Translations under genes and position numbers: made by a program
Virus record (IMG/VR): IMGVR_UViG_3300034358_000008
Location: 1 to 64,000 of that record
Length of the DNA: 64,000 bases
Direction: 5' to 3' (one strand)
Shown: positions 1,409-42,920 of the stretch, piece by piece
How positions within the stretch are numbered: position 1 is the stretch's first letter
How the letters are laid out: every line of letters begins with the position of its first letter
Notes under the pieces: model-generated
What the model was told of the DNA's origin: nothing
Databases searched by the model: none
Seen by the model: only the letters and a program-made list of their open reading frames with translations

Positions 1409-1431
1409 CTATTTCGCTATTGGAGTTTACA

Positions 1432-2871
1432 ATGTCTGCTGTTAAATACCGTGCTGTTAAAGAAGACACCCGTGCATTGGTTCGAGTTGTTAAAGTTGAC
1501 TCGATCAAACCTATTAAGAAAGCTGACTTCGTTGAGTTGGCTATCATCGGTGGTTGGCAATGTGTAGTTAAGAAAGGTGAGTTCCAAGCAGGTAGTCTAG
1601 CTCTGTACGCAGAGATCGATGCCTTGTTGCCAGTGTCCAATCCGGTTTGGGCTTTCTTGGGTGAACGTAAAGAAGGTCAGAAGACTTTTGACGGTGTGCT
1701 CTACTCGCGTATCCGTACTGTGAAACTACGCGGTGAAGTATCGCAAGGCCTACTTACCCCACTCCCAGCAGAATGGGTAGGTAAGAAAGATATGGAAGGC
1801 GCCAACATGACTAACATCATGGGTGTCCGTAAGTTGGAAGAAGAGATCTTGAATACAGATGGTTTTGACGGTCGTCTGAATCGTGAAGGTCCGGTAAGCT
1901 GGTGGGAACGTCTGGTACGTATTGTAGCGGGTAAACCTGCTCCTTCGTTGTTCCGTCCATTCCCTTCGCAGATCTCCAAGTCTGAACAACAACGCGTGCA
2001 GAACATCGGTCACCATTACGCAGCAGCTGCTGAAGCTGATGAACTGTTTGAAGAAACCGTTAAGGCTGATGGTCAATCGATGACGGTCTATAGCTTCCAA
2101 GATATGGATGAAGCTGGACCAGTTAATCGTTATGGTGTTTGCTCGCGTAACTATGACATGGGTCTTGAAGATATCACCTTCACTTGGGAACAAGCCTTCC
2201 GTCGTTTCATTGCACAGAACATGCTTACCCTGAGTGGCGGGTCTTACGGTTTCTATCGCACAGCTCTGTACCTTAAGAGCCAAGTCGATCTAGGTGTAGT
2301 TAAACCACTCGATGCACTGAAAGAACTGTTCGGTAAACGTTACTACTGGTTCGTCCCGTTCATCAAGACATTGCGCGCTATGGATGACAACTGTGTTAAC
2401 TTTGCTCTGACTCGCGGTGTGTTGTCGGCTGTGGCCAAGTACAACGTTGCTAACAATGATGTCATCACGGTCCAAGGTGAGTTGTTCGGTCCAGGCATTC
2501 AAAAGAACTACGAACGCCCTGCTGACAAACGATTCGCAGTATATCAGGTTTACCGTAATGGTAAGCTGTGGGTTGCTCCAGCTGAAGCCCGTGAAATCGT
2601 CGCCGCTATGGGTCTGGAATACATCCATGTACTGTGTGCAGCAACCGTACTACCAAAGAGCCTTAAAGACGTGTTAGCTAGCGCCAAAGGTAAAGGTGTC
2701 TACGCTGAACGCGACCCAGAAACGAATGAGATTCCTGAAGTAAGACGCGAAGGTATCGTATTCAAATCCACTACTCGTGATTTCTCTTTCAAGGTAATCT
2801 CGAATGAATACCTGTTGTTGAAAGAGAAGGAAGCTGATGCTGAAGAGGCTACTGAAGTTGAGCCAAGTTGA
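1432..2871 (+). CDS. RNA ligase, DRB0094/Rnl5 family
   Basis: N-terminal GGWQCVVKKGEF...KLRGEVSQGLL domain; nucleotidyltransferase motifs KADGQS, VQGELFG, REGIVFK and FKVISNEYL; SD GGAG before ATG 1432. Confidence 0.88.
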   Translation: MSAVKYRAVKEDTRALVRVVKVDSIKPIKKADFVELAIIGGWQCVVKKGEFQAGSLALYAEIDALLPVSNPVWAFLGERKEGQKTFDGVLYSRIRTVKLRGEVSQGLLTPLPAEWVGKKDMEGANMTNIMGVRKLEEEILNTDGFDGRLNREGPVSWWERLVRIVAGKPAPSLFRPFPSQISKSEQQRVQNIGHHYAAAAEADELFEETVKADGQSMTVYSFQDMDEAGPVNRYGVCSRNYDMGLEDITFTWEQAFRRFIAQNMLTLSGGSYGFYRTALYLKSQVDLGVVKPLDALKELFGKRYYWFVPFIKTLRAMDDNCVNFALTRGVLSAVAKYNVANNDVITVQGELFGPGIQKNYERPADKRFAVYQVYRNGKLWVAPAEAREIVAAMGLEYIHVLCAATVLPKSLKDVLASAKGKGVYAERDPETNEIPEVRREGIVFKSTTRDFSFKVISNEYLLLKEKEADAEEATEVEPS

Positions 2872-4784: not shown

Positions 4785-5069
4785 ATGTCGTTCGACAAAG
4801 TAACTCGTCGTGTTAATCGTGTCCAAGCTAATCGCGTAATCCGTAATCAGACTGCTATCTGGTCTTTGTATAACGAACAACGTTGGTTGGAATCACAGAA
4901 GCCTCGTAGCTTCAGCAAAGGTAAGGCTATGAACTGTAGCTGCCGTATTTGCCGTGGTTGGGACAAAGATGGACGGCGCCACCGTTACAATTATCAGTTG
5001 GAGAAAGCCGGTATGCACAAATACGATGAGCGTCCTGATATCATCACTCAAGAAGAAGATTGGATCTAA
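4785..5069 (+). CDS. Small basic protein with a CSCRIC motif
   Basis: 94-aa ORF followed by terminator 5072-5093. Confidence 0.7.
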   Translation: MSFDKVTRRVNRVQANRVIRNQTAIWSLYNEQRWLESQKPRSFSKGKAMNCSCRICRGWDKDGRRHRYNYQLEKAGMHKYDERPDIITQEEDWI

Positions 5070-5115
5070 ATGAGTCCCTTCGGGGACTCTTTTATTTTGT
5101 CTAGAGGAAACTACA

Positions 5116-5538
5116 ATGCCACAACAGAAATATTCATGGAATACCCGCTGGTATCGTTTCAAGAATAAGTGGACTCACTTTTGGAATAACATTGGCTTCT
5201 GTGCGCTACTGATGTTCTTCTGGTTACTGCACGTCTTAATCTTAGGTTGGTTTCAGTATCTCTTCTATCCGAAGGCTTATGTTATCAAGGCTCGCTATAT
5301 CCTAGAAGACGTTGATAACGACCCACGTGAGCGTCCTAACCACGAATTCTGGTGGAACCGTCACAACTGTAATGCTGCAAAGAAAGCTGCTGCAATGAAT
5401 GAACCAGAGTCATATGTTCAATTCACCGAACGGGTTCACCCATTCTTTCTGGATAGTGAAATCTTCTACGTGCGTTCCAAAGGGTATAAGGCTCGTTGGA
5501 TTGATGACGATGAAAAAGTCTACCCACAATCCAAATGA
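5116..5538 (+). CDS. Hypothetical membrane protein
   Basis: Hydrophobic segment IGFCALLMFFWLLHVLILGWFQYLF; GAGG SD. Confidence 0.7.
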   Translation: MPQQKYSWNTRWYRFKNKWTHFWNNIGFCALLMFFWLLHVLILGWFQYLFYPKAYVIKARYILEDVDNDPRERPNHEFWWNRHNCNAAKKAAAMNEPESYVQFTERVHPFFLDSEIFYVRSKGYKARWIDDDEKVYPQSK

Positions 5539-31004: not shown

Positions 31005-32309
31005 ATGTCCACGCAAATCGTAACCTGTCCTAACATGACTCTCGTAATCAAGCGACTGACTGATTACACTGTCATGCACCTCTCTGGTCTCTCCAACATC
31101 CCACACCTCTGCGTTAAGGTTCGTCACAACAACGGCTTTGTGTGGTTTGGCATCAACGTAATCGGTGTTACCGACACAAGTGCATGGTCGAAGAAGACAG
31201 AAGAAACTGTCTACAGCCAGTTCATGGAAGCAATGCGACAGATCATCGACATCGTTACTCTGGAATCGGATGTACCATTGTTGATGCGTTCTTTGCAGGA
31301 TATCACTACTGGTCGTAAGCGTCCTGTGATGTTCGGTGGTAACACCAACGAGTTCGTTCAGATCTGTTCCACTAACAATGTGCAGATCGAAGTGTATCGT
31401 CATGAAGTTCGTCACGAGGCCACCACTTACGGTGGCTTCTTCGCTACGGCCCGTGCTGGCGGTAAGACATATCCAGTAATGGTCTACCATCGTGGGATCA
31501 TCCTGTACAACTACATCACTAAAGAAGCAGTTTGCGAAATGCTTCGTAATGAACTGACTGCTTTGTTCCCAGATACCTTTGGGACTGATCTCGTTATCAA
31601 GTTCAGTGATATCGAGTCTGTTCCACGCAACCGTAGCAAACGGAGCTAACCATGAACTCTCAGATCCTTATTGTAGATCTTGTCCGTAACTGGCATACGG
31701 TCGGAAACAACTCAAGGTTCGCTAGTAAGGATCTTGAGCATTTCACGTTGTCTTTGGTAAGTCAACCGGTTGAATACGATGGCACAGAAGACTTCTCTGT
31801 TATCGTGTTGTGGGGTGATGTTGAAACGAAGCCTAAAGCCGAAGGTGAGCGGAATCCAGTTCATGACCTAATCCATGAAGTGGTGAAGAAGTTCGCTATC
31901 GGTGTAGGGTGTCGTACCAGTCAAGTCAATCATGATAACCGGACTACCAAGGTCAAGCTTAAAGCTGAAGAAGCAAAGAACGTTGTTGAATTTGAATGGC
32001 TGGAGATCAACCTTGCAGATCACAAAAGACTCGAGTGAATTAAGTAGGACCAAGAAGTTAGCGCGCCGTTACGCAAACATGTTGGTGATCTGGGTAACGC
32101 TCACGTATATGCTCGTGATCGCGGTCGGCGTACCGATTAGCATTATCCCAGACATAAAGACATTACTCATTGTCCCTCGTGTGGAAGATCACACTTTGTT
32201 GAAATGGTTAATGTCGGCTTACCTTGCGACAGCATTCTGTCTGGAATGGTTCCTGTATGGAGTCATTCAACGTGCTCGTGCGCGGATCAAGTTGTACGAA
32301 GTAGATTAA
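31005..32309 (+). other. Hypothetical CDS (31005-31649, 31652-32038, and a 2-TM protein ending at 32309)
   Basis: Coupled ORFs. Confidence 0.65.
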
Positions 32310-32334
32310 AGGAATACTGTTGTGGTAATAATAT

Positions 32335-32795
32335 AGGAGTGAATGCTCCTCCCGTGATCATCATGCCTTTCATTGGCAACACCCCCTGATCGCGGGCTTC
32401 CTATTCAGAACCATTGCTACGGCAGTGGATCTAAAAGTTTAGGAGTTCTCAAGGGTCATCTCCCTATCCATGGTCCCCGTCGCCTTAGCTACAGGATAGG
32501 GCCTTGATCGAACTCCGCCTAAGCATAGCTGAACTTTCGGTATACGCGAAGCATTTCCCTCTCCGGGTTTTGTCTTGTGAAGAACATAGTGGCCATTAAC
32601 CAGTGGTCGAACCGAAGCATTGTCCCTTGACTGGTTCTCATCCTGACAATGAAGTTATCAACAACATAACACTAACTGGTTAGGTTATTAGAAGATAGCG
32701 ACTGACGATTGCGATACCTCTGAATAAGCTGGGGGTTACGCTGGCCAGCACGCAAGAGTTAGATTACAGCCCAAGCCCCCTGCCATCTGGCGGGG
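32335..32795 (+). ncRNA. Candidate large structured ncRNA (about 460 nt) of unknown family
   Basis: About 510-nt gap with no credible ORF; many helices, a pseudoknot and a terminal terminator (see findings). Confidence 0.7.
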
Positions 32796-32821
32796 GCTTT
32801 ATTTCGTCTTAAGGAGATACT

Positions 32822-33265
32822 GTGAAAAAGATCGATAACACAACATTCCTGATTGAAAGACAGGGCGAACTGGAACAGGTCGTCATTGACTATTTCAAGG
32901 GTGAAGCCGACGCCGGACTTATTCGTGGTCACGTCGCCGGAATCCCAAGTTGGTATTCTGTTTATTACTTAGAGGTGCCGACCGAGTATCCATTCGTTGC
33001 ATTACTAAATGATGACGATGAGCGTTGTAACATCGAATTCCAATATGTCAAACCTAGTGACTTCATCTGTATTGATGATGGTTCGCAACGTCTGTTCGAA
33101 TTCCAACTACGTCGGTCAATGACCTCAAGTCCTTATCGCGTGGTCGAGTCAACTTATCAAATACCCGCAAAAGATATCTTCGAGGCTCATCTCAAACTTG
33201 GTCAGACCATGCACCGAAGCGAAGAGTATGAACTGGAGGTCGTTTCCTATCAACAAGTTCGCTAA
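32822..33265 (+). CDS. Hypothetical protein (paralog of 33479-33976)
   Basis: FLIE..GEL...P..YP......D.E.......V..SDF shared between the two. Confidence 0.7.
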   Translation: MKKIDNTTFLIERQGELEQVVIDYFKGEADAGLIRGHVAGIPSWYSVYYLEVPTEYPFVALLNDDDERCNIEFQYVKPSDFICIDDGSQRLFEFQLRRSMTSSPYRVVESTYQIPAKDIFEAHLKLGQTMHRSEEYELEVVSYQQVR

Positions 33266-33478
33266 GGAGTAAGTATGACATTGCAAGATGAACTAGAAAA
33301 GCTTTACCGTACCGTGAGGAATCCACTCTTCCAAAATTACCGGCGGCATCCGGTACAGTTACGTTTGGTGGGTGTTGCCAGATTCAACATGTCCCAAAGT
33401 GAAGGTCAGGTAGGCAATGGTTTTATCACCACTGTAGACCGCTTGACTTACCGCCACTATATCGACTAAGGAGGTACT

Positions 33479-33976
33479 GTGAAAGAATTAGCGCGTAATG
33501 ATGACATAGGTTCATCTGATGCTTATCGCTTTCTTATTGAATCGGAAGGCGAGTTACAAGAAGCGATCGGTAGTGTTATCGTAAAAGATAACCTTAGTCT
33601 TCGGGCAAGTGTCCGGGGCGCAGTAGACGTACCGGGGACGTATCCGTACATTGTTTGCATCTACGGTGATGAAGAATACGATTTCGTTTCACTGGCATTC
33701 GTAACAGTCTCTGATTTCTTTGATGGTCCGAATTACTGCCAACAAATCCGTGATCAGTTGATCAATGCTGAAACCATGAAATGTCAAATGGAACGCATCA
33801 ATGATGCAATCCAAGCCAAAGAGTCTGAAGTTGAGTTCCGTGATCTCGATGATGAGCCTAATCCAGATAATCAGTACTGTCTTAATAACGCACAAGCTGA
33901 ATGGTTTCGTCTGAGTGGCTTTAAAGTTAACTGGGAAAAATATCCACGCACGTGGAAGGTCTCTGGTTGGTTCTAA
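33479..33976 (+). CDS. Hypothetical protein (paralog of 32822-33265)
   Basis: Same motif set. Confidence 0.7.
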   Translation: MKELARNDDIGSSDAYRFLIESEGELQEAIGSVIVKDNLSLRASVRGAVDVPGTYPYIVCIYGDEEYDFVSLAFVTVSDFFDGPNYCQQIRDQLINAETMKCQMERINDAIQAKESEVEFRDLDDEPNPDNQYCLNNAQAEWFRLSGFKVNWEKYPRTWKVSGWF

Positions 33977-34143
33977 GCTTTAATAAGGAGTAAAACGATG
34001 TTGGGGTTCGATGATCCAATGACCCGTGCAAAACGGGCACGCAGTAAGCGTCAACAGCAAGCTTTCTTTAATCTGACCATCGGGCTAGTACTCGGTGGGT
34101 CTATGTCGTTTCTAGTGATGGAACTAATCAAAGGAGTTTCTGT

Positions 34144-34629
34144 ATGAGCGGGTTCTGGGGATACGGCAGTGAAGGACATGAAGCGTTTCACGAAAACGCA
34201 TTCAATGAATTATTAGAGACTGTGCATGGGGATGCCAGTCACATCGATCCATTAGTGATGCCTGTTATTACACATGCCTTCGCTTACTACGGTGCAGTGA
34301 GTGTGTGGAGTTGTGAGGGTCATCCAGAGCGTGGTGACAACAAAGGTTACATCACCTGGATCTTTAAGGACGCTGTGAAGCACATGGCCTTTCTGGCGAT
34401 GATGAACCAAGCTCAAACTTGGATGCACAACATCGATCAGAAGGCACACCTGATGTTCGAGTTGGAAGCTAATCCACTGCATCACTCTACAACTGAATAC
34501 GATACCATGGCAATGCCTTCGTTAACACTGCGTACCATGTCGTTCCGTAATAACCGCATTAAAGCACGCTGGTGGGATGAGCTGTTGGAATGCATTACCA
34601 AAATTACTCAAATGACAAAAGGACTTTGA
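34144..34629 (+). CDS. TYW3/Taw3-like fold protein
   Basis: IDPLVMPVI....GAVSVWSCEGH resembles the Taw3 pattern IDE.I.P.L..IN....Y.TTSSCSGR. Confidence 0.45.
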   Translation: MSGFWGYGSEGHEAFHENAFNELLETVHGDASHIDPLVMPVITHAFAYYGAVSVWSCEGHPERGDNKGYITWIFKDAVKHMAFLAMMNQAQTWMHNIDQKAHLMFELEANPLHHSTTEYDTMAMPSLTLRTMSFRNNRIKARWWDELLECITKITQMTKGL

Positions 34630-34630
34630 A

Positions 34631-35140
34631 ATGTCACTACCTACCCTGCCGACCGTAACACTAAACTGCAAGAAAATCGACCACGAAAAACTCTACGATC
34701 ACTTCGAAAAGAAACAAGACGAAGGCCGGTGGGATAAATACAATACGGATATGTTGACATTCGTTAACTATCTGTGGAATCGTCAACTGGGTTCCGTTGT
34801 GGCTATGTCGCACAGCGGTATTGGAGAAGACGTTTCCAATGGCTTCATTCAGTTCATCTGCGACCATCCGGTAATGATGAATGATCTGATCTCAGAGTTG
34901 TCTACTGTACGTGATATTACATCACGCGCATCTCAGCCAACCATCGAGATCCGTTCCAAGTCATTGCCACGGGACATTGATATTCCGGGTATCCACTCGC
35001 ACATCACTGTGATGTTCCGTACACCTCGGTTCCGTTCTCGTAACGAAGCCAGTGCATGGTGGTCAACGCTCGCTGGTAAAGTGACCCAATCCTATGAAAC
35101 TAATATAGGAGACGGTCATGTTGAGAGCCGTGTTGCTTAA
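34631..35140 (+). CDS. Degenerate paralog of 34144-34629
   Basis: GSVVAMSHSG..G(F/Y)I and RT..FR.....A.WW..L shared. Confidence 0.5.
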   Translation: MSLPTLPTVTLNCKKIDHEKLYDHFEKKQDEGRWDKYNTDMLTFVNYLWNRQLGSVVAMSHSGIGEDVSNGFIQFICDHPVMMNDLISELSTVRDITSRASQPTIEIRSKSLPRDIDIPGIHSHITVMFRTPRFRSRNEASAWWSTLAGKVTQSYETNIGDGHVESRVA

Positions 35141-35537
35141 AGGTAATCCAAGGTTCGTCAAGACTGACCTAGCCTTAGAATACTACAACGATATCACCCA
35201 GTTCGTTGAAGAACTCGGTGTAAGCGTTACAGACGATCCAGAAGCTTTGGATAGTGCAGACATCATCATTGCCCATGGCAAAGCTGTAACTCGTCTAGGT
35301 GACACTGGCGTGGTTCCAGTTGTTCGTCTGGGACATCCTGATGGCGTATGTCATCCTAAAGATTACGACTGGCAATGTAATGGACAAAAGGGTATACCGC
35401 CTGATGAACATTTGATCCTGACTGCTGACCAGAAATTGGCGATGCAAGAAAAGATCGAGTTTCTCAAACGGGCAACAACCCCAGCGGTAGCTGTAGAGTC
35501 ACGTCAGGCCTCCTCACGGCGCCCTGGAGTGCGTTAA
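35118..35537 (+). CDS. Possible virion protein
   Basis: C-terminal AVES fits a phiKZ head-protease S/A/G-x-E site. Confidence 0.4.
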   Translation: MLRAVLLKGNPRFVKTDLALEYYNDITQFVEELGVSVTDDPEALDSADIIIAHGKAVTRLGDTGVVPVVRLGHPDGVCHPKDYDWQCNGQKGIPPDEHLILTADQKLAMQEKIEFLKRATTPAVAVESRQASSRRPGVR

Positions 35538-35539
35538 GG

Positions 35540-35881
35540 ATGTCACTGGTAAACGTCATGCAGTTCTGCAAAACGATCTCTCAGGAGTCTCATGGGAGCT
35601 ATACGGTAGATGAGCTAATAGAGTACGCTAAAGGTAAACCTGTAACTTCGGTTGATCTTGAAGAACTCCGTTGGCAGTATCCACATGATCGTATCAGCAA
35701 GAAGCGTCTTGACCGAATAGTCATAGACGGTTTCCCTATCATCGTTATGCGAGATGCTGATGGTACACTTAAGACACTCGATGGGTTCCATCGCGCTTAC
35801 AAGGCTATAAAGGAAGGTCGTAAGACTATCCAAGCTGTACTGATTACAGAAGCTGATCTAAGAAAGCTACGATCACGCTAA
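35540..35881 (+). CDS. ParB/Srx-like N-terminal domain protein
   Basis: PIIV......TLDGFHRAYKA signature. Confidence 0.75.
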   Translation: MSLVNVMQFCKTISQESHGSYTVDELIEYAKGKPVTSVDLEELRWQYPHDRISKKRLDRIVIDGFPIIVMRDADGTLKTLDGFHRAYKAIKEGRKTIQAVLITEADLRKLRSR

Positions 35882-35931
35882 CACGTCATAAAGCCCCTAC
35901 CTTCGGGTAGGGGTATTATGCTGTTTCTTTT

Positions 35932-36309
35932 TTATTTCATTGTACGCTGAGTACGGAGCAGTTCGCGTGCACGAACCCACATCTTCTGGAACAGGTCTTT
36001 ACGTTGACGGATGACCTGATTGCCGCCACGGACAATATCAGTTGTTTCAATTTCAGGGTTATTCCGTGCTTCGTCCATCAAGTCATGCATGTGCTTTAGT
36101 GTAATGACTTGGTTCTCTTCGGTTAGCTGCGGATACAATCGATCGTATTCATCTGCGTAATCGAAGTCACGCGTAATACGGTAACCTACTGTACCGATGT
36201 CGATACGAAAGAAGCCACGGTAAGCATGGAAGCCTCCACCGATACGCCACATTTCATCACCGGGTTTGTTTACAAGCTTCTCTATTTTGAACTGAGGTAG
36301 TTTCATGTT
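35932..36309 (-). CDS. Hypothetical protein
   Basis: Probable start MKLPQFK behind an AGGTG SD. Confidence 0.6.
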   Translation of the reverse strand, partial: NMKLPQFKIEKLVNKPGDEMWRIGGGFHAYRGFFRIDIGTVGYRITRDFDYADEYDRLYPQLTEENQVITLKHMHDLMDEARNNPEIETTDIVRGGNQVIRQRKDLFQKMWVRARELLRTQRTMK

Positions 36310-36313
36310 ACAC

Positions 36314-37198
36314 CTATTTGAGGAAAGTCCCACAGGAAGCCTGTACATCTGTACCGACACGCGGGATTAGTTTGACACGGCCTTCAGGCAAGCGTCGTTT
36401 GATATAGCGGTAAAGGTAATCGATCTGACCGAATACAGGTTCACGTGACAGGTGTCCCTCTGGTGGATTGTAGCGAACGATATTCCAGTTAACGTCTAGT
36501 TGATAACCATCGATCTCATCTAGAATACACTTGACGTCATGGAGTGTGTCATTCTCGTGTTCAATGAAAGCGTAATGGATCTTTGGAACTTTACCGGTGT
36601 GGAGCTGCCATTCTTTAAGTGCACTAAACGCATTACGTGGGTATTGGGCTTTAGGTAACCAACGCCGACGGAATCGTTCGTTAAGCGAATATACAGAGTA
36701 GTACAACTCAGGGTAAACCGTTGGATCTTGGAATACGTTTACTAGACCCCTGTTACCGAACTCCTCAGGGAAGATAGTCGAGATCAGGAATTTAGCTTCC
36801 AATCCGTATGCAGCTGCACGTTCTTTCAACCCACGCAGAATCAAGTCAGCATTAGCTAAGAAGATCCTGTTGGCCAATGGTTCGCCACGCGCCATGAAAT
36901 TAAAGTGAACACGTTCAGCCGGATGTTTGGTAGCATAGTATGCCAATACTTCGTCCGCCTGCTGGAAATATTCCTCCACAGTGACGTCACGCAGATCAGT
37001 CTGTCCAGTGGCCGTCAACCAGCACATCCTACAAGCTTGCTTACAGCCCGTCTGAGAGCTTAAGTAAACAATGAAGTACTCGTCTGTCCTTCTTACATAA
37101 CGTGCCTCCAATCGTCCCCTGTGATCTTCAAAGACATGTTCGAAGTTAACGGATTGGTCTAATTGCGAATGGTGTTCTTTAAAGATCAGCTGGGTCAT
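36314..37198 (-). CDS. RlmN/Cfr-like radical SAM protein lacking the N-terminal domain
   Basis: SSQTGCKQACRMC (CxxxCxxC), FMARGEPLAN (cf. MGMGEP), ENDT, RYNP and C-terminal ASCG (cf. AACG). Confidence 0.85.
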   Translation of the reverse strand: MTQLIFKEHHSQLDQSVNFEHVFEDHRGRLEARYVRRTDEYFIVYLSSQTGCKQACRMCWLTATGQTDLRDVTVEEYFQQADEVLAYYATKHPAERVHFNFMARGEPLANRIFLANADLILRGLKERAAAYGLEAKFLISTIFPEEFGNRGLVNVFQDPTVYPELYYSVYSLNERFRRRWLPKAQYPRNAFSALKEWQLHTGKVPKIHYAFIEHENDTLHDVKCILDEIDGYQLDVNWNIVRYNPPEGHLSREPVFGQIDYLYRYIKRRLPEGRVKLIPRVGTDVQASCGTFLK

Positions 37199-37208
37199 GG
37201 TAGGTCCT

Positions 37209-37853
37209 TTAGTATTTATAAGGTGCTTGGGTTGAAAGCTCTTCTAGAGTTTGGTAAGTAGCCAACCAATCGGTAGGCCAGCCTTGAGCGAGTTCGTATA
37301 ACCGATCTAACAGAGCTTCCCAATCGTAACTTCGACCAGGGAGATATTCTACGAATAGCTGTGCCATACCGCCTGTCCGTAAAGTTACTTCCTTACTGAT
37401 CTCATCCATTCGTTCCCAATGAGCGTTAAGGTCTTTACTCTTCCAAGCAACGAATACATCGAAGTCATTGTAACTACATTCGTAGAAGTCTTGCGACAGG
37501 TCACCAATCAAACAACCGATGTCATAACGGGCTTTCTCTTTAATAGCCTCGTCAGTACGGAGAGATGGTACTTCTATCTTAATCTTGAATTTACCAATGT
37601 TGTACAACGTGATGATAACATTGACGTGACGTTCGCCTTTGGTGTTAACCCACAGGGAATAAACGACGTCGTGTGCATTGAGCATCTTATCCAGTTCACG
37701 TCGGACTATGTTTCGGAACGGTACTTGGTTAAGGTACTGGTGACGCTTAGCTATTAAAGATAGTTCTTTAGAGAAAGTTGTAACCCATTCATCAACGCTT
37801 GGATTGAAGCGACTCTTAACATGAACATGCGCGATAAAATCATGTAGGTACAT
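37209..37853 (-). CDS. Hypothetical protein
   Basis: 214-aa ORF with GAGG SD, upstream of the radical SAM gene. Confidence 0.7.
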   Translation of the reverse strand: MYLHDFIAHVHVKSRFNPSVDEWVTTFSKELSLIAKRHQYLNQVPFRNIVRRELDKMLNAHDVVYSLWVNTKGERHVNVIITLYNIGKFKIKIEVPSLRTDEAIKEKARYDIGCLIGDLSQDFYECSYNDFDVFVAWKSKDLNAHWERMDEISKEVTLRTGGMAQLFVEYLPGRSYDWEALLDRLYELAQGWPTDWLATYQTLEELSTQAPYKY

Positions 37854-37921
37854 AGGAACCTCGGATAGTAGTGGTCTACACTATCTACCATACAAGTATT
37901 TATTGGAACCTATTATAGCCC

Positions 37922-37929
37922 TATATTAC
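37922..37929 (+). promoter_or_regulatory. Early promoter motif TATATTAC
   Basis: Exact motif in a divergent gap. Confidence 0.7.
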
Positions 37930-37961
37930 TCTTGTGAATATCAACCCAAAAGGACTTTGAC

Positions 37962-38486
37962 ATGTCTAAAAGTAATTCGAAAGTAAACTGTGTGTTCTAT
38001 GGTTTCATCGGTGTGTTGTTAGCATTTGCTGCTGTCTGTCTCGTTATGGCTATTGCTGGCGTTCTAACTCGCCCAGTGTATGCCTCTGAAATGAAAACTG
38101 AACAGTATGAGGTGCTCTATAAGCTTCCCAAAGAGGAAGTCAAGATCACCAAAGAAGTATGTGACACTGTGACTCAATCGGCTGCCTGGATTAAAGGCAT
38201 GATCAATAAAGGTTACGATGATGATGCGATTAGTGAGAAACTGTCTGAAGCAGCTCTGGCTAATCTGGGTGATCGTAACGGTTGGATTGCCTACTACATG
38301 CTGGTTGATCCAAAGGCTTTGGCTAACATGCGTGAATGGCCTACAGAAGCCTCTTACCAGTGGATGCAACAGAAGTACCCTACCATGAATGGTGGTGAGT
38401 ACTATCAGGTATACGCCGGTGGTAAATGCGATCAATTGATCGGTAAGATTGTGAAGGTGCATCAGGTAAAGAAGCTTGATGATTAA
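37962..38486 (+). CDS. Putative exported or membrane-anchored protein
   Basis: N-terminal hydrophobic segment; two Cys in the mature region. Confidence 0.65.
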   Translation: MSKSNSKVNCVFYGFIGVLLAFAAVCLVMAIAGVLTRPVYASEMKTEQYEVLYKLPKEEVKITKEVCDTVTQSAAWIKGMINKGYDDDAISEKLSEAALANLGDRNGWIAYYMLVDPKALANMREWPTEASYQWMQQKYPTMNGGEYYQVYAGGKCDQLIGKIVKVHQVKKLDD

Positions 38487-38538
38487 CGTCATATTGCCCT
38501 CACCTTCGGGTGGGGGCAATATGTTCTATTTTTTTTGC

Positions 38539-38934
38539 TTAGCTCAGCGAGCCAATCAATTTATCCCCTAGGAATAACTGTAACATGTAACCGTTCCAAG
38601 TCCTGACAGATGGTTTCCAGTATGATCGGTGATTAGAACCACCCATTGCGTCACTTGCACTATGTACTCGCCATTTACCCATCAATGTGTCTTCAAGCAT
38701 TACCCGCATTTGTTCACGGGTACGCGTGCAATCTCCCAGAAGGTTTTCACGAGTATATACTTCGGCTTCCATTAGGTACAGGTTAATGAGATCTTGCGGT
38801 GGTTGCATAACCTGGTCAGCTATGGATAGACTCCGAGCCGTTACCTTTTGCACATTCTTCAGTGCGCTCTCAGCAGCTTTACGTTCACCGTGCATACGAG
38901 CAATGTTGTTCTTAAGTGTTTCTAGTTTACGCAT
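38539..38934 (-). CDS. Hypothetical coiled-coil protein (true start probably 38934)
   Basis: GAGGA SD before MRKLETLK; the longer listed ORF runs through a terminator. Confidence 0.65.
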   Translation of the reverse strand: MRKLETLKNNIARMHGERKAAESALKNVQKVTARSLSIADQVMQPPQDLINLYLMEAEVYTRENLLGDCTRTREQMRVMLEDTLMGKWRVHSASDAMGGSNHRSYWKPSVRTWNGYMLQLFLGDKLIGSLS

Positions 38935-38960
38935 TGTATTTTCCTCTAAGACGGAATAGA

Positions 38961-39246
38961 ACCCTACCCGAAGGTAGGGTCTAAGGACGAGTTTACTGTT
39001 TCGCTTCAGCCCATGATACCTTGGGGAAGGGTGCTCTAATATCATCGAGTAGATGGACCTAGTGCCTGAGTCGTCAGGTGTTCAGTCTATTCGGGGTACG
39101 GGCCTTCGACTTTCCTGATACTCTCTTATTCCGACTTGTCAGAGAGCGTCACGGGACATTATTTAATCTCAACTACCTACAGTCTGTGGCCCTAGTCTGA
39201 GGGGATTGGGGGCAAGTAGTTGGAAGAGCAGGACTGTTAGTCTTAC
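38961..39246 (-). ncRNA. Candidate structured ncRNA (about 270-285 nt including the terminator)
   Basis: Starts at the ATAGTATGTA motif, has several stems, and ends at a cUUCGg terminator (38961-38980). Confidence 0.65.
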
Positions 39247-39249
39247 ATA

Positions 39250-41160
39250 CTATCGTGACCAGAGTATTTCTTTCCACTCGTCCGGTAGTTTGTTCATCAG
39301 GTCCTCTACAGTTTGACTCTGGATAAACTGTTTCTGGAGTTGATGATACCTCCAACCCTGAACGGTTTCATATCGAATATCATCGGCGTTATTAGAAGCG
39401 ATATAACCCTTGATCACGTGTAAATCATCACGTGTTTCTTTGTCCCATATCGGTACTATAATTACCGTACCCTTGTACTCTTGATAGAAAGCTAGATCTT
39501 TCAGCAAGTAAACTTTCACCTTACAGTCCGTGTGATAATCTACTACCGAATTGTAGTGCTTAATGAGTTCCAATGCCGCGGGGAACAGCATAGCTAATTC
39601 CTTGGACTGCCTTTGTTCAAGTTCCCATTGCATTACAGTTGTAACAGTTTCGTCAGACAACTCAAGTTTGACTGGGTACGATTGACCACATGAGCAATAA
39701 GTGTAAATAAGCTTATTACCTGTTACCCAGATATCGCCCGATTGTTGGGCATGTAACTGGAGACTACCGTCCGCATCTTCAACGAAGTATTCCTTTTCGG
39801 GATTAAATGCAATTACAGGTGACGCTGGATTAGCGTGGATATAACGTGAAAGAATGCTTTGATCTAATACCATGATGTTTGCCTATGTGAAGTTGTCGTA
39901 GTGTGTCTCACCCGACTTCATTAGATTATCAATGTGAGTACTATTTATCCAAAGACCGCTCTAGCAGCCGCTTCGCTTGATTGCAGTTCACCGCAGTAGT
40001 TACTATACCTGCCAGTAGCAGGATCAAAGCGGAGTTGATCTGTTTTCTTAGGACCGATTGTGATTACCAGTTTCTCGCAGGCTTCGCGGAAACTGAGTGC
40101 TGTTTCTCGACCTATTAGACTAGGTGGTTCATGGTTACCATTATCACGCCAACCAACGGACCAGATCTCAAACTCCCGTGGACGAAGGATATGGTCACGG
40201 CACTCTTTAAGGACGGACATGATCTGATCAAAGTCTTCATAGCCTAAAGCTGTAGCATCACGAACAAATGCACGTTGTGAATGGCCATCAGTCACTAGTT
40301 CGTCCAGAGCTTCTGACTTCTCAATCAAGACGCCTTTGTTATAAAGGATAGCGAGGTCGTTCCACTTCATCCATTCACCCTGTGGGTCCTCTGTGAGCTT
40401 CCCAGTGGGTGGTGGAGCATGTCGGTCAACGATGATACCGATTGGTTTAGATGTATAACGTTTAATAAGAGTTAGGGCTGACATTAGTCTACCTGTATGC
40501 TGATGTAGATCTTGGTTGATCCGGCGTAGATGATATCGTCATTGGTGTACTGTCCAGCCGATACTGGTTTAGATCCAATCACTACGTGATAGTTATCATT
40601 CTTGAAGTTCTTTATAAATCGACAAACCTTGTGTCGTATGTATACGCGACATTTAGTCGATAGCCTAGGGAATTCCTTAGCTATGATCCGATCCATTGTA
40701 CGGTGGTAATCTTGCATGGTCACCTCACAACGTGCACCGCTTGGCTAAAATTTCAGGGGTCATCTTTTGAGCTTCATGTTCGCGAGCGGCACGTTCATTG
40801 AATAGTCGACTACGTTCAGCATGTTGGGCTAAACGTTCTTCTCGGGTAGGGGCAATACGTTGAAGGATCTTTTCCAATAGGTTTTCTGAAAGCATGGTAA
40901 CCTCAATGGCACATGTTAGAACCGACTGTATGGCATTCGCACATACAGATCTTTCTTTTGGCTGTACCGACTTCAACATGATGGTAGATAGGGTATCGTT
41001 GTTCCCGACTATAGATCCACTTACCTAGTTCAGAAGTAGTATCTTCTACAGCAACCAACTTAGCGGACTCGCCATAGTTCTGCTGAAGAAATGTTTCCTT
41101 TACCGTACCATCAGTATTGATGTATTTCTGGTAAGTGTTATCACAGCATGGCTGGCACAT
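39250..41160 (-). other. Minus-strand hypothetical CDS (39250-39873, 39945-40484, 40484-40723, 40725-40895, 40903-41160)
   Basis: Coupled ORFs with GAGG SD motifs. Confidence 0.65.
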
Positions 41161-41223
41161 GGATTAATCCTCAATTAGTTAACTATAGGTCTAGACTAGT
41201 GGGTAATCTTTGAGACGGCATAA

Positions 41224-41554
41224 AGCCAGCCCGAAGGCTAGCTCGTACCAATCGACTACTTTTTGTAAGGCGCGGTCTTATTAGCGCTCCCTTGTACATG
41301 AGACCATCATCGCTTCAGTAGATGGAGGGATCTCAAGTAAACAGTTCGGTTGCGCGACGCAACCTATTTCTAACAGCAGCCGGTCCTCCCGGTCATGGGG
41401 TTTGAACCCTTCCGTGTTAGCTGTATTGTACAATGTTCTCTCCGGTGGCTACGGGTCTTTTCCCTCATTCCTGAGGTCTAGGGTCTTCTCACGCTTACGA
41501 GGCGCTGTCACTATCGCAATCCACATGAACATTGTATTCCCGTGCACGGGAATT
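41224..41554 (-). ncRNA. Candidate structured ncRNA (about 310 nt) downstream of tRNA-Trp
   Basis: Several perfect stems, a T-loop-like arm, and a terminator at 41224-41243. Confidence 0.6.
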
Positions 41555-41630
41555 TGGCACGCACCCCAAGAGTCGAACTCGGAACCAACTGCTTTGGAGG
41601 CAGCTGCTCTGCCAGTTGAGCTAGGCACGT
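41555..41630 (-). tRNA. trnW: tRNA-Trp (CCA)
   Basis: 76-nt cloverleaf; anticodon loop CTCCAAA; T-loop TTCGACT; encoded CCA. Confidence 0.93.
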
Positions 41631-41641
41631 ATTAATTCTTT

Positions 41642-41651
41642 TACATACTAT
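41642..41651 (-). promoter_or_regulatory. ATAGTATGTA late-type (TATG) promoter motif
   Basis: Lies 11 nt upstream of tRNA-Trp; same 10-mer at 39244, 42878 and 51187. Confidence 0.65.
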
Positions 41652-41959
41652 TACTTAGCGAGTAAACTTTTCACGTAAGCTTCCCATTCAAACACTGTAA
41701 AGATAGTCCTGAGTAGGTCACACGTTGATACACCATTTACATAGTTGATATGTAAAGTCTTTAACGAGTGAGCTGGTGTGATGTATGTTAAATTGGAATC
41801 GTATATATCATGCTTCACCAACAACCCATTGCATACATTACCTCCTTCGCTACAGAGGTATGTGATATGATGCCGTCTCTCAACGCCGGTCTCTTCGCAA
41901 TCTGCAACTGCATGATTTGATATTGTAATCATGTCTCTTTTACAACATGGACACTTCAT
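41651..41959 (-). CDS. Small Cys-rich putative zinc-binding protein
   Basis: MKCPCCK...C...C....C pattern. Confidence 0.6.
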   Translation of the reverse strand: MKCPCCKRDMITISNHAVADCEETGVERRHHITYLCSEGGNVCNGLLVKHDIYDSNLTYITPAHSLKTLHINYVNGVSTCDLLRTIFTVFEWEAYVKSLLAK

Positions 41960-41971
41960 AGTAGGTAACCT

Positions 41972-42142
41972 TTAGATAGTACATCTGCGGTTAAGCATTT
42001 CTTCCGTAGGACGTTGCTGCTTAGCCATCAGTGACAGTTGACGAGTCATCAATACCGTACGCATACGGGAACGCCTTAGCCGTGTGGCTTCATCAGGACC
42101 CATAGCCAACCTAGCTTTTTCATACAGTGCTTCTACTGACAT
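41972..42142 (-). CDS. 56-aa basic protein, paralog of 40725-40895
   Basis: Same length; shared L.EK, P, RL and T.E.L..RCT motif. Confidence 0.65.
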   Translation of the reverse strand: MSVEALYEKARLAMGPDEATRLRRSRMRTVLMTRQLSLMAKQQRPTEEMLNRRCTI

Positions 42143-42199
42143 TTGAATAACCTTTAGGGAAAGACGGAATAAGAGAACCCCGAAGGGCTCTCTTAGAAT

Positions 42200-42275
42200 T
42201 GGCTCCATGACCTGGACTCGAACCAGGGACCACACCGTTAACAGCGGTGGGCTCTACCAACTGAGCTATCATGGA
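42200..42275 (-). tRNA. trnN: tRNA-Asn (GTT)
   Basis: 76-nt cloverleaf TCCATGA...TCATGGA-G-CCA; anticodon loop CTGTTAA. Confidence 0.95.
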
Positions 42276-42359
42276 ATGTAACTGGGTGATTCTCCTAACG
42301 CCGTAACGTTAAGTTAAGACAGCATTTACTCAGGCGCAGCCGCTGCAAGAATCATGTAA

Positions 42360-42524
42360 CTATGCTTGCTGTTCACGTTTGTCAAGTATGTACTCGGCAT
42401 CGTTCACAGCTTCTTTTAGAACTTGTTTATCTAGCTTCAGATTTTTCCAGCTAAGTCGAGAGCAACACTGACAGTCAGCTGGTCCGAAGTTATCCAATGG
42501 ACGTGGTTTGATTTTTACTTTCAT
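42360..42524 (-). CDS. 54-aa protein with a CxCC motif, inside the tRNA operon
   Basis: GAGGTG SD before MKVKIK. Confidence 0.6.
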   Translation of the reverse strand: MKVKIKPRPLDNFGPADCQCCSRLSWKNLKLDKQVLKEAVNDAEYILDKREQQA

Positions 42525-42717
42525 CAGACACCTCTTTGAATAGGTAGAATGTAATGTCACTTTAACCAGCGTAAGCTAATAGCCCTGTTAGATAGGCGGG
42601 CCGTCCGAATCAAGGGAGTTGAACCCAAGTTCTACATTACATTCATACAACTGGCGACGGGCACTGTTTAGACTCAGTGCACGGTCAAGCACGCTTGGGA
42701 GGCGACCGTCATTAAAA

Positions 42718-42802
42718 TGGTGGAGAGACAAGGATTCGAACCTTGGAAGAATTAACGCCGGATTTACAGTCCGGTCCCTTTGAGCCGCTCGGGAATCTCT
42801 CC
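42718..42802 (-). tRNA. trnY: tRNA-Tyr (GTA)
   Basis: 85-nt class II cloverleaf; anticodon loop CTGTAAA; GGTTCGAATCC; encoded CCA. Confidence 0.95.
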
Positions 42803-42877
42803 AGTAATAAGCGGGCACTTTCGATCACACTTAAGCAACCTAGTTATGCCCTAAATCTGGCGGACTTTGTATAGTCC

Positions 42878-42887
42878 TACATACTAT
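42878..42887 (-). promoter_or_regulatory. ATAGTATGTA late-type promoter motif of the tRNA-Tyr operon
   Basis: Same 10-mer; about 78-nt leader to tRNA-Tyr. Confidence 0.65.
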
Positions 42888-42920
42888 TGCAACAATTGTA
42901 TTCTTTTACAACGACTTACA

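What the first reader, a model, noticed from the sequence alone, without database searches (positions are those of the whole stretch)
32335..42880. Possible RNA-modification and decoy island
Within about 10 kb are a large ncRNA, TYW3-like genes, an RlmN-like gene, two more structured RNAs, three tRNAs and tRNA-like elements; an RNA ligase lies elsewhere in the window. RlmN and TYW3 both act at tRNA position 37, next to where anticodon nucleases cut. The hypothesis is a phage module that modifies, repairs or decoys tRNA against host tRNA-targeting defences.
Basis: inference. Interest (0 to 1): 0.7.

Follow-up and report, generated by a model that had tools for sequence, protein, structure and literature searches.

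The report
Jumbo-phage stable-RNA and SAM-enzyme block
This 10-kb stretch of a nucleus-forming Pseudomonas jumbo phage holds three tRNAs, at least five conserved structured non-coding RNAs that share one promoter motif, an unusual RlmN/Cfr-like radical-SAM enzyme and two TYW3-fold proteins, but nothing shows that they form one anti-defence machine.

Summary
The window is the first 64 kb of a 325-kb chimallivirus related to 201phi2-1.

What is there:
- The genome's only three tRNAs (Tyr, Asn, Trp).
- A ~470-nt non-coding RNA with strong covariation and no Rfam match.
- Four further covarying small RNAs, none of which folds as a tRNA.
- A 294-aa RlmN/Cfr homolog. It keeps the Fe-S cluster motif and the methyl-carrier Cys. 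It lacks the N-terminal domain and has an invariant Tyr where RlmN has the resolving Cys118.
- Two remote paralogs with a TYW3/Taw3 fold. One keeps a Cys motif, S-x-x-S-C-x-G-H.
- An RNA ligase 30 kb away.

New findings:
- The four RNA transcription units share a promoter-like motif that occurs almost nowhere else in the genome.
- The core of the large RNA has a syntenic ~120-nt counterpart in other chimalliviruses, including a weak match in phiKZ between gp288 and gp289. It is followed there by a TYW3-like gene, gp290.

The parts are separable, so the clustering is best read as lineage synteny. phiKZ lacks the radical-SAM gene. Psa21 and Phabio lack TYW3-like genes. Distant homologs of the radical-SAM gene sit beside DNA-repair genes. 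The anti-defence or decoy reading is untested and gets no specific support.

The parts
32308..32335 (+). Promoter-like motif (AAAGGAATAC-N8-TAATAATATAG) upstream of the large ncRNA
   Evidence: The motif AA-N3-5-TAC-N8-11-ATA-N-TAT-R occurs 5 times in the 325-kb genome against 1.5 expected. Four of the five lie upstream of RNA units. It is conserved in all six aligned relatives and precedes tRNA clusters in relatives.
32337..32806 (+). Large structured ncRNA, about 470 nt, ending in an intrinsic terminator (hairpin 32777-32796)
   Evidence: 32 compensatory pairs; energy z-score -11.4 against column shuffles; no coding signal; no Rfam match. A 178-nt metatranscriptome contig covers 32592-32766.
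32397..32546 (+). Conserved core domain of the large ncRNA (covariance model R1)
   Evidence: 97% of cells pair, 15 of 31 pairs are compensatory, 0 of 500 shuffles reach that. Syntenic matches in Phabio, Psa21, L011, L012, L015, L082 and, weakly, phiKZ.
32822..33265 (+). ORF of 147 aa, function unknown, paralog of 33479-33976
   Evidence: BLASTP E 4e-6 between the two. No family match. It occupies the position that gp289-like genes hold in phiKZ and L082.
33479..33976 (+). ORF of 165 aa, function unknown, paralog of 32822-33265
34144..34629 (+). TYW3-fold protein 1, Cys type (motif S53-V-W-S56-C57-E-G59-H60; acidic D36)
   Evidence: Model pLDDT 75. Top structural matches are 2qg3 (Z 9.3), 1tlj (7.8) and 2drv (7.3). 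ESM features point to TYW3/DUF6919/MTHFR_C clusters. Family alignment A10. phiKZ gp290 is a member.
34631..35140 (+). TYW3-fold protein 2, degenerate type (His where the motif has Cys); homolog of 201phi2-1 gp428
   Evidence: Model pLDDT 73. Matches 2qg3 (Z 7.9), 2drv (7.1) and 1tlj (7.0). hhalign against the family of protein 1 gives probability 84%, E 8e-6.
35118..35881 (+). Two ORFs of unknown function (35118-35537, phrog_30942; 35540-35881, phrog_17560)
35932..36306 (-). Small ORF directly downstream of the radical-SAM gene (phrog_38838), function unknown
   Evidence: An ATG lies 7 nt after the stop codon of the radical-SAM gene.
36314..37198 (-). Short RlmN/Cfr-family radical-SAM enzyme, 294 aa (C52/C56/C59 cluster motif, C289 methyl carrier, Y45 at the RlmN Cys118 position)
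37209..37853 (-). ORF of 214 aa upstream of the radical-SAM gene on the same strand, function unknown
   Evidence: No family or atlas match. Present only in L003/L008 and L006.
38949..39244 (-). Structured RNA of about 295 nt. In relatives it is the leader of tRNA-Leu; here it ends in a terminator (38949-38982) and the tRNA is gone
   Evidence: 27 predicted pairs, 15 compensatory. Promoter motif at 39246. PMC11512511 reports a 5'UTR-derived sRNA immediately upstream of a tRNA in 201phi2-1, whose record holds a single tRNA, Leu.
41368..41425 (-). Small structured RNA C (10-bp closing stem plus two hairpins)
   Evidence: 6 compensatory pairs against 0.8 in shuffles; z -5.5. It lies inside the tRNA arrays of L005, L009 and L015.
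41428..41535 (-). Small structured RNA B, about 108 nt, just 3' of tRNA-Trp
   Evidence: 86.6% identical to an unannotated gap in 201phi2-1. 8 compensatory pairs against 0.8 in shuffles; z -4.3. Single-sequence fold z -2.9.
41555..41630 (-). tRNA-Trp (CCA); promoter-like motif begins at 41644
42200..42275 (-). tRNA-Asn (GTT), followed by a terminator at 42162-42193
42360..42524 (-). Conserved 54-aa ORF inside the tRNA unit
   Evidence: Differences fall mainly on third codon positions, for example 27 against 6 and 7. 79-85% amino-acid identity in L006, L007, L009, L012 and L013.
42549..42650 (-). Small structured RNA A (9-bp closing stem, T-loop-like hairpin GGGUUCAACUCCC)
   Evidence: 7 compensatory pairs against 1.4 in shuffles; z -6.0. 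It lies next to tRNAs in L005, L006, L007 and L015-L017.
42718..42802 (-). tRNA-Tyr (GTA)
42880..42906 (-). Promoter-like motif of the tRNA-Tyr unit
1420..2871 (+). RNA ligase (PHA02142 OB-fold domain plus RNA_ligase domain), 30 kb from the block

Best explanation
The stretch is a collinear segment of Pseudomonas chimallivirus genomes that houses the phage's stable-RNA genes together with accessory SAM-dependent enzymes. It is not one dedicated operon.

Shown:
- Four RNA transcription units start at a shared promoter-like motif and end at the phage's standard terminators.
- They encode three tRNAs, three small structured RNAs embedded in the tRNA units, a ~295-nt former tRNA-Leu leader, and a ~470-nt structured RNA. 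That RNA is an expanded form of a ~120-nt sRNA found at the same position in other chimalliviruses.

Inferred:
- The phage RNA polymerase makes these RNAs together, probably in the middle phase, and host RNases release the tRNAs and small RNAs.
- The tRNAs top up decoding for a 45% GC phage in what is presumably a GC-rich Pseudomonas host.
- The radical-SAM enzyme uses methyl-Cys289 and a 5'-deoxyadenosyl radical, as RlmN and Cfr do, to modify an adenine in RNA (rRNA A2503 or a tRNA). Tyr45 replaces the resolving cysteine.
- The Cys-type TYW3-fold protein binds SAM and methylates an unknown substrate, possibly RNA. Its Cys-less paralog is non-catalytic.
For: - All RNA elements are real and covary.
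- The motif is almost exclusive to the RNA units: 4 of 5 genome-wide hits against 1.5 expected. It precedes tRNA clusters in relatives. PMC11512511 states that tRNA-Leu of 201phi2-1 is transcribed from a middle promoter.
- Synteny gp287, gp288, sRNA, gp289-like, TYW3-like holds in phiKZ, L082 and the window.
- The tRNA region next to the gp303-like head gene is shared with phiKZ.
- Homology to RlmN/Cfr covers the whole catalytic domain, including the cluster motif and the C355 equivalent.
- The TYW3 fold came out of two independent models, and the family keeps a Cys motif.
- Phages that carry the radical-SAM gene tend to be tRNA-rich: 15 of 16 near-complete genomes have tRNAs, often 30-65.
Against: - No transcription data exist for this phage beyond one 178-nt metatranscriptome contig.
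- No substrate is known for either enzyme family.
- The radical-SAM protein scores far below the RlmN and Cfr cut-offs (54 bits against 290) and lacks two defining features.
- Its neighbours in distant phages are DNA-metabolism genes.
- 201phi2-1 carries the gene with only one tRNA.
- Codon usage was not computed, so the codon-supply role of Tyr, Asn and Trp tRNAs is assumed, not shown.
Confidence: 0.55

Rival explanations
1. One reading: a counter-defence module. Phage tRNAs replace tRNAs cut by host anticodon nucleases, the radical-SAM and TYW3-like enzymes modify them near the anticodon so that they resist cleavage, the small RNAs act as decoys, and the RNA ligase repairs cuts.
For: - RNA genes and RNA-type enzymes are co-located, and the block is syntenic across the clade.
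- Relatives carry the full GUN-anticodon set (His, Asp, Tyr, Asn). From my own knowledge, colicin-E5-type nucleases target this set, and phage tRNAs are known to rescue infection from tRNA-cutting defences.
- A few distant phages have the radical-SAM gene inside tRNA arrays (L027, L047, L048, L054).
- An RNA ligase is present.
Against: - The parts are individually dispensable in relatives.
- 39 of 47 distant radical-SAM loci have no tRNA within 10 kb, and their neighbours are DNA-repair genes.
- There is no match to the kinase family PF13671 or to a CCA-adding enzyme, and the ligase is 30 kb away.
- No small RNA is recognised as a tRNA or shows a 7-nt anticodon-like loop.
- TYW3 chemistry has no substrate in bacteria.
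- Tyr, Trp and Asn tRNAs are not known m2A37 carriers.
Confidence: 0.12
2. The large RNA, and its ~120-nt counterparts, is a cis-acting leader (attenuator or riboswitch-like) that controls read-through into the downstream operon of gp289-like and TYW3-like genes. It is not a free-standing RNA.
For: - In phiKZ, L082 and the window the RNA lies directly upstream of these genes on the same strand.
- Its terminator ends a few bases before the ribosome-binding site of the next ORF.
- The downstream genes bind or use SAM, so a ligand-sensing leader is conceivable.
Against: - Terminators with the same tail stand after most units in this region, so the arrangement is not special.
- Psa21 and Phabio keep the RNA core without any TYW3-like gene.
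- No alternative antiterminator pairing was looked for or found.
- No known riboswitch family matches.
Confidence: 0.2
3. The radical-SAM enzyme does not act on tRNA or rRNA. It modifies DNA or a nucleotide as part of the phage's replication and repair functions, and its place near the tRNAs in this clade is accidental.
For: In three separate distant subclades the gene lies directly after an NAD-dependent DNA ligase (10 loci), SbcCD-like genes (9 loci) or a RecA-like gene (9 loci). It lacks the N-terminal domain, which in RlmN is an RNA-binding accessory domain (own knowledge), and it lacks the resolving Cys.
Against: All characterised relatives (RlmN, Cfr) are RNA methylases. The neighbours differ between subclades, as expected for accessory genes in early or replication regions. 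Cellular homologs in Planctomycetota carry no phage context.
Confidence: 0.1

Closest known systems
RlmN / Cfr radical-SAM RNA methylases (TIGR00048, TIGR04432; PDB 3RFA, 5HR6, 9P0P)
   Same: The radical-SAM core aligns over its whole length. It has the CX3CX2C cluster motif (C52/C56/C59) and the C-terminal '(A)SCG' cysteine that corresponds to the methyl carrier Cys355.
   Different: It is about 80 residues shorter at the N-terminus. An invariant Tyr stands in 'YLSSQTGC' where RlmN and Cfr have the resolving Cys (Cys118 in RlmN), and no other invariant Cys exists. Scores are far below the family cut-offs. The family lives in jumbo phages and Planctomycetota.
TYW3 / Taw3 SAM-dependent tRNA-yW N4-methyltransferases (PF02676; PDB 2QG3, 1TLJ, 2DRV)
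   Same: The overall fold is shared (Z 7-9.3 over about 120 residues). In protein 1 and in phiKZ gp290 a motif S-x-x-(S/C)-C-x-G-H sits at the place of (S/T)xSSCxGR, with an upstream acidic residue (PMC5311493).
   Different: No Pfam match reaches threshold. The motif has His for Arg and Trp/Tyr for Ser. Protein 2 has no Cys. The proteins are 30-40 residues shorter. The hosts make no wyosine, so the substrate must differ.
Phage T4 tRNA cluster with its two co-transcribed stable small RNAs (species 1 and 2, rnaC/rnaD) of unknown function (own knowledge)
   Same: Small, stable-looking structured RNAs of tRNA-like size are interspersed with phage tRNA genes in shared transcription units.
   Different: There is no sequence relation. 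More elements are present here, and they are conserved within chimalliviruses. Processing has not been shown.
sRNAs of 201phi2-1 and phiKZ mapped by ONT-cappable-seq (PMC11512511, PMC10914365)
   Same: They come from the same phage group. PMC11512511 reports a 5'UTR-derived sRNA immediately upstream of a tRNA, transcription units without a CDS, and one sRNA conserved across genera.
   Different: The conserved sRNA reported there (sRNA005, upstream of gp277 / phiKZ gp182) is a different locus. Their size filter of under 250 bp would exclude the 450-nt RNA. I found no mention of gp288 or gp289 in the phiKZ papers.
Large phage-associated ncRNAs found near tRNAs (GOLLD, ROOL; Rfam)
   Same: These are also large, ornate, phage-borne RNAs located near tRNA genes.
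   Different: No match even at E up to 5. This RNA is smaller and has a different architecture.

Membership tests
RlmN/Cfr radical-SAM methylases | CX3CX2C motif binding the [4Fe-4S] cluster | tested here: met
   C52-x3-C56-x2-C59, invariant in 21 family members and aligned to the motif of Cfr and RlmN.
RlmN/Cfr radical-SAM methylases | C-terminal methyl-carrier cysteine (RlmN Cys355) | tested here: met
   C289 in 'DVQASCGTF' aligns with 'DIDAACGQ' of Cfr and RlmN and is invariant.
RlmN/Cfr radical-SAM methylases | Resolving cysteine seven residues before the cluster motif (RlmN Cys118) | tested here: not met
   Tyr45, invariant in the family, aligns with Cys in Cfr 9p0p and RlmN 6fz6, and with Ala at that position in 4pl1. 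From memory, 4pl1 is the C118A mutant. There is no other invariant Cys.
RlmN/Cfr radical-SAM methylases | N-terminal accessory domain (about 60-80 residues) | tested here: not met
   The alignment starts at RlmN position 79-88. The protein has 294 aa; the Cfr and RlmN PDB chains it matches have 349-404 residues.
RlmN/Cfr radical-SAM methylases | Score above the curated family cut-off | tested here: not met
   TIGR00048: 54 bits against a cut-off of 290. Cfr models: 39-44 bits against 468-550.
RlmN/Cfr radical-SAM methylases | Methylation of A2503 in 23S rRNA or A37 in tRNA | not testable with these tools
   Needs biochemistry or modification mapping.
TYW3/Taw3 | TYW3 fold (SHS2 plus RAGNYA domains with an N-terminal extension) | tested here: met
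   For both models the top three of 48,161 chains are TYW3/Taw3 structures, Z 7.0-9.3 with about 120 aligned residues. Model confidence is moderate (pLDDT 73-75).
TYW3/Taw3 | Signature motif (S/T)xSSCxGR | tested here: inconclusive
   Protein 1 has S-V-W-S-C-E-G-H, keeping four of the six specified motif positions (Ser, Ser, Cys, Gly), with Trp for Ser and His for Arg. phiKZ gp290 has T-I-Y-C-C-S-G-H. Protein 2 has M-S-H-S-G-I-G with no Cys, so the motif is not met there.
TYW3/Taw3 | Invariant N-terminal Asp and the His at the end of strand 3 (SAM binding) | tested here: inconclusive
   An acidic residue in 'I(D/E)' about 21 residues before the Cys is common in the family. His80 is conserved only among close relatives of protein 1. 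No structural superposition of side chains was made.
TYW3/Taw3 | Pfam PF02676 at gathering score | tested here: not met
   No match in the whole genome even at E up to 10. Two remote family members reach E 0.004-0.006, 16-17 bits against a cut-off of 27.
tRNA (for the small elements A, B and C) | Cloverleaf recognised by ARAGORN or the Rfam tRNA model | tested here: not met
   Only the three tRNAs are found, even with introns allowed and thresholds lowered.
T4-type tRNA repair (Rnl plus Pnkp) | RNA ligase together with a polynucleotide kinase/phosphatase | tested here: inconclusive
   A ligase is present. PF13671 finds nothing in the genome. Only this one kinase family was searched.
Any Rfam 15 family (for the large RNA) | Match to a curated covariance model | tested here: not met
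   No match at gathering scores, and none at E up to 5 except terminator-like noise.

The most novel reading that the evidence does not exclude
The block is a working RNA system in three parts:
- The Cys118-less RlmN/Cfr enzyme either uses a new Tyr-assisted way to resolve the methylene adduct, or stays covalently attached to its target RNA.
- The chimallivirus-wide sRNA (expanded here to 470 nt) and the tRNA-embedded small RNAs are its, or the TYW3-like enzyme's, substrates, guides or decoys.
- Together they protect or retune translation against tRNA-directed host defences.
Probability: 0.07. Interest if true: 0.85.

Novelty: new variant of a known kind. Interest (0 to 1): 0.55.

Why it matters
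Chimalliviruses shield their DNA in a protein nucleus, so RNA-level conflicts and RNA traffic matter a great deal for them, yet their non-coding RNAs are almost unmapped. This stretch gives three concrete, testable objects.

- A structured sRNA family is kept at one genomic position across several Pseudomonas chimallivirus lineages, with a weaker match in phiKZ. It is enlarged four-fold in one subclade and shares its promoter type with the tRNAs.
- A jumbo-phage and planctomycete branch of RlmN/Cfr replaces the cysteine that normally releases the enzyme from its RNA adduct. This raises a clear mechanistic question.
- A phage branch of the rare TYW3 methyltransferase fold occurs in hosts that have no wyosine. 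It includes gp290 of the model phage phiKZ.

None of these is yet tied to defence evasion, but each can be addressed in the tractable 201phi2-1 and phiKZ systems.

Tried and rejected
- Rfam at gathering scores and at E up to 5 gave nothing beyond the tRNAs.
- ARAGORN with introns, lowered thresholds and mitochondrial models found no extra tRNA or tmRNA.
- Pfam, PHROGs and NCBIfam left most ORFs of the block unnamed.
- Foldseek against the PDB gave no clear match for TYW3-like protein 1; its best hits were noise, with Taw3 entries only at ranks 5, 17 and 19. AlphaFold DB clusters gave only uncharacterised small proteins such as SPbeta YoqC.
- The atlas search on ORF 37209-37853 found nothing.
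- The weak GIIM match (E 0.005) for ORF 37962-38486 is treated as chance. Its N-terminus is strongly hydrophobic.
- Pattern scans for the RNA core found only the known relatives in viral contigs and one more contig among metagenome contigs.
- No RNA run was listed for the 10-kb stretch. One metatranscriptome holds only two short contigs over 12 kb, and its apparent tRNA-Tyr coverage belongs to another organism's contig.
- BLAST of the large RNA against E. coli genomes gave no match, so there is no detectable rRNA or tRNA similarity.
- The supplementary tables of the 201phi2-1 transcriptome paper are not held.
- I considered and dropped a permuted-tRNA reading of element A (the D-arm does not form) and a hammerhead reading of element C (the order of junction strands does not fit).
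- TYW3-like genes were not found within 10 kb of the radical-SAM gene in any distant phage. Other TYW3-like contexts (L085-L087) show no radical-SAM gene on short contigs.

Full report
**Origin.** The window is bases 1-64000 of a 324,912-bp viral record. Its nearest isolates are nucleus-forming Pseudomonas jumbo phages: 201phi2-1, Viktualia, Psa21, Phabio, D6 and RVTF4. GC content is about 45% throughout.

**tRNAs.** ARAGORN and Rfam agree on three tRNAs on the minus strand: Trp(CCA) at 41555-41630, Asn(GTT) at 42200-42275 and Tyr(GTA) at 42718-42802. These are the only tRNAs in the genome. Relaxed searches find no further cloverleaf.

**The large RNA.** Between the stop of the gp424-like ORF and the start of ORF 32822 lie about 510 bases with no conserved reading frame.
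- The stretch aligns end to end with unannotated or doubtfully annotated DNA in 201phi2-1 and Viktualia, and with four metagenomic relatives.
- Substitutions are spread evenly over the three codon positions, and most indels are not multiples of three.
- RNAalifold predicts 111-114 pairs, 32 of them with compensatory changes. Column-shuffled alignments give a mean of 6.4 and a maximum of 14, and the energy z-score is -11.4.
- The RNA starts after a conserved motif and ends in a strong terminator at 32777-32796. No Rfam family matches.
- A covariance model of the best-conserved 150 nt (32397-32546) gave an alignment of nine sequences. In it 97% of cells pair and 15 of 31 pairs are compensatory. 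No shuffle out of 500 reaches that, and the signal collapses when partners are slid by one to three columns.
- The same model finds weaker matches at the same relative place and strand in Psa21 (E 4e-7), L011, L012, L015/L017 and L082 (E 2e-5 to 7e-4). In phiKZ the match is at 263163-263284 (E 0.014-0.025), which is the gap between PHIKZ288 and PHIKZ289.
- In those phages the RNA is about 120 nt followed by a terminator. In the 201phi2-1 subclade it has gained about 300 nt of 3' domains. Shared core features are AUCUCCC, CCCGUC, GGUGCC and CCUAU, with covarying stems.

**Other RNAs.** An nhmmer scan of the intergenic pieces against relatives showed four more conserved elements.
- A (42549-42650, minus strand) has a 9-bp closing stem, seven of whose pairs covary, and a T-loop-like hairpin. 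In relatives it always lies between tRNAs.
- B (41428-41535) follows tRNA-Trp. It is 86.6% identical to an unannotated gap of 201phi2-1, a phage whose record holds a single tRNA, Leu.
- C (41368-41425) is a small three-way structure found inside the tRNA arrays of L005, L009 and L015.
- All three beat column-shuffled controls, with z from -4.3 to -6.0 and 6-8 compensatory pairs against about 1.
- A fourth RNA (38949-39244) corresponds to the leader that precedes tRNA-Leu in Viktualia and 201phi2-1. In the window and in L006 the tRNA is missing and a terminator follows. 15 of its 27 predicted pairs are compensatory. It probably corresponds to the 5'UTR-derived sRNA that PMC11512511 reports immediately upstream of a tRNA.

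**Shared promoter motif.** The motif AA-N3-5-TAC-N8-11-ATA-N-TAT-R occurs five times in the whole genome, against 1.5 expected. Four of these hits lie directly upstream of the large RNA, the leader RNA, the tRNA-Trp unit and the tRNA-Tyr unit. In relatives the same motif precedes the tRNA clusters. PMC11512511 assigns tRNA-Leu of 201phi2-1 to a middle promoter. Co-regulation is inferred, not shown.

**Expression data.** These are thin. No RNA run was listed for the region. One peat metatranscriptome holds a 178-nt contig inside the large RNA and a 210-nt contig in ORF 35118-35537, and nothing else over 12 kb.

**Radical-SAM protein.** ORF 36314-37198 (294 aa) matches PHROG 27142. It matches RlmN/Cfr models weakly but specifically: TIGR00048 at E 1.2e-14, Cfr structure 9p0p at E 2e-9, and E 4.8e-17 with a family profile.
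- The family has more than 2,400 members, including Planctomycetota proteins at about 54% identity.
- In an alignment of 21 members the invariant cysteines are C52, C56, C59 and C289. C289 aligns with the methyl-carrier Cys355 of RlmN.
- The position of the resolving Cys118 is an invariant Tyr. The N-terminal ~80 residues of RlmN have no counterpart.
- The protein therefore works like RlmN/Cfr in its first steps but fails two defining features. The consequences for chemistry are inference.

**TYW3-like proteins.**
- Pfam finds no TYW3 in the genome.
- Language-model features pointed to TYW3, DUF6919 and MTHFR_C clusters for both ORFs.
- AlphaFold models (pLDDT 75 and 73) each returned three TYW3/Taw3 structures as the top matches among 48,161 chains.
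- The two ORFs are remote paralogs: hhalign gives probability 84% and E 8e-6.
- An exhaustive profile search found only ten relatives. Two of these touch Pfam TYW3 below threshold.
- The family alignment shows S-x-x-(S/C)-C-x-G-H and an upstream acidic residue. These resemble the TYW3 signature (S/T)xSSCxGR and the invariant Asp described in PMC5311493.
- Protein 2 has His in place of the Cys.
- phiKZ gp290 is a clear Cys-type member.

**Linkage across relatives.**
- 76 viral loci encode the radical-SAM protein. In the 13 close loci, tRNAs lie upstream on the same strand wherever the contig reaches them. In 39 of 47 distant loci no tRNA lies within 10 kb, although four have the gene inside tRNA arrays.
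- Near-complete genomes that carry the gene are mostly tRNA-rich.
- Conserved neighbours in distant subclades are an NAD-dependent DNA ligase, SbcCD-like genes and a RecA-like gene.
- Homologs of TYW3-like protein 2 accompany the radical-SAM gene only in the 201phi2-1 subclade. A diverged Cys-type member does so in L082, where the radical-SAM protein is 56% identical, the arrangement is the same and five tRNAs are present.
- Five complete relatives with the radical-SAM gene have no TYW3-like gene at all; the same search finds both copies in the window's own genome, which serves as the positive control.
- phiKZ has the sRNA core, gp290 and the tRNA region next to the gp303 head gene, but no radical-SAM gene.
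- The order gp287, gp288, sRNA, gp289-like, TYW3-like is collinear in phiKZ, L082 and the window.
- The clustering is therefore best read as inherited genome order with gains and losses of single parts.

**Repair components.** The RNA ligase is real but 30 kb away. The genome has no match to the kinase family PF13671 or to the CCA-adding-enzyme family PF01743.

**Verdict.** The functional reading as a tRNA-defence module is possible but has no specific support, and several of its links are weak. The best-supported view is a stable-RNA locus with a shared promoter class, lying next to two unusual SAM-enzyme families whose substrates are unknown.

Noticed in passing
window 1420-2871 (+): In the RNA ligase ORF the OB-fold domain lies at residues 20-115, but the ligase domain matches only residues 345-460 (profile positions 60-171). 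About 230 residues in between match no family, which could be an insertion or a diverged nucleotidyl-transferase half.
   Followed up: no
window 42360-42524 (-): A 54-aa ORF inside the tRNA unit is truly coding, with a strong third-position bias. At 79-85% amino-acid identity it is better conserved than its neighbours across relatives, and it always lies among tRNAs.
   Followed up: partly
window 38949-39045 (-), compared with L001 11124-11205 and L002 16264-16350: Viktualia and 201phi2-1 have a tRNA-Leu(UAA) at this position. It is missing in the window and in L006, while its structured leader RNA is retained and now ends in a terminator.
   Followed up: yes
window 32774-32809, 38949-38982, 41213-41244, 42162-42193: The terminators in this region share a GC-rich hairpin followed by the same tail, TTTATTCCGTCT or a near variant. 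This is probably the phage's general terminator signature.
   Followed up: partly
L055 7871-8026: A distant phage that carries the radical-SAM gene has two adjacent tRNAs with anticodon CTA (called tRNA-Pyl). These would be amber suppressors and may indicate stop-codon recoding.
   Followed up: no
proteins P0080, P0097, P0119: The short radical-SAM family has cellular members in Planctomycetota/Gemmataceae at about 54% identity to the phage protein. This suggests transfer between phages and these bacteria.
   Followed up: no
window 34144-34629 (+): The atlas structure search matches this TYW3-fold protein (TM 0.70 over 146 residues) to a domain of a 629-aa actinobacterial 'radical SAM protein' cluster. 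This may be a fusion of the two protein types that are neighbours here.
   Followed up: no
window 37962-38486 (+) and 38490-38523: A lone plus-strand ORF with a strongly hydrophobic N-terminus sits among minus-strand genes. It is followed by a perfect 15-bp hairpin that could terminate transcription in both directions.
   Followed up: no
201phi2-1 4801-5253 and Viktualia 96858-97286 (record coordinates): Both phages carry a second TYW3-like copy far from the block.
   Followed up: no
window 41166-41367 (-): About 200 nt lie between RNA C and the terminator at 41213-41244. They contain a further hairpin (41348-41364) and are partly conserved in L001 and L006. This may be one more small RNA.
   Followed up: no
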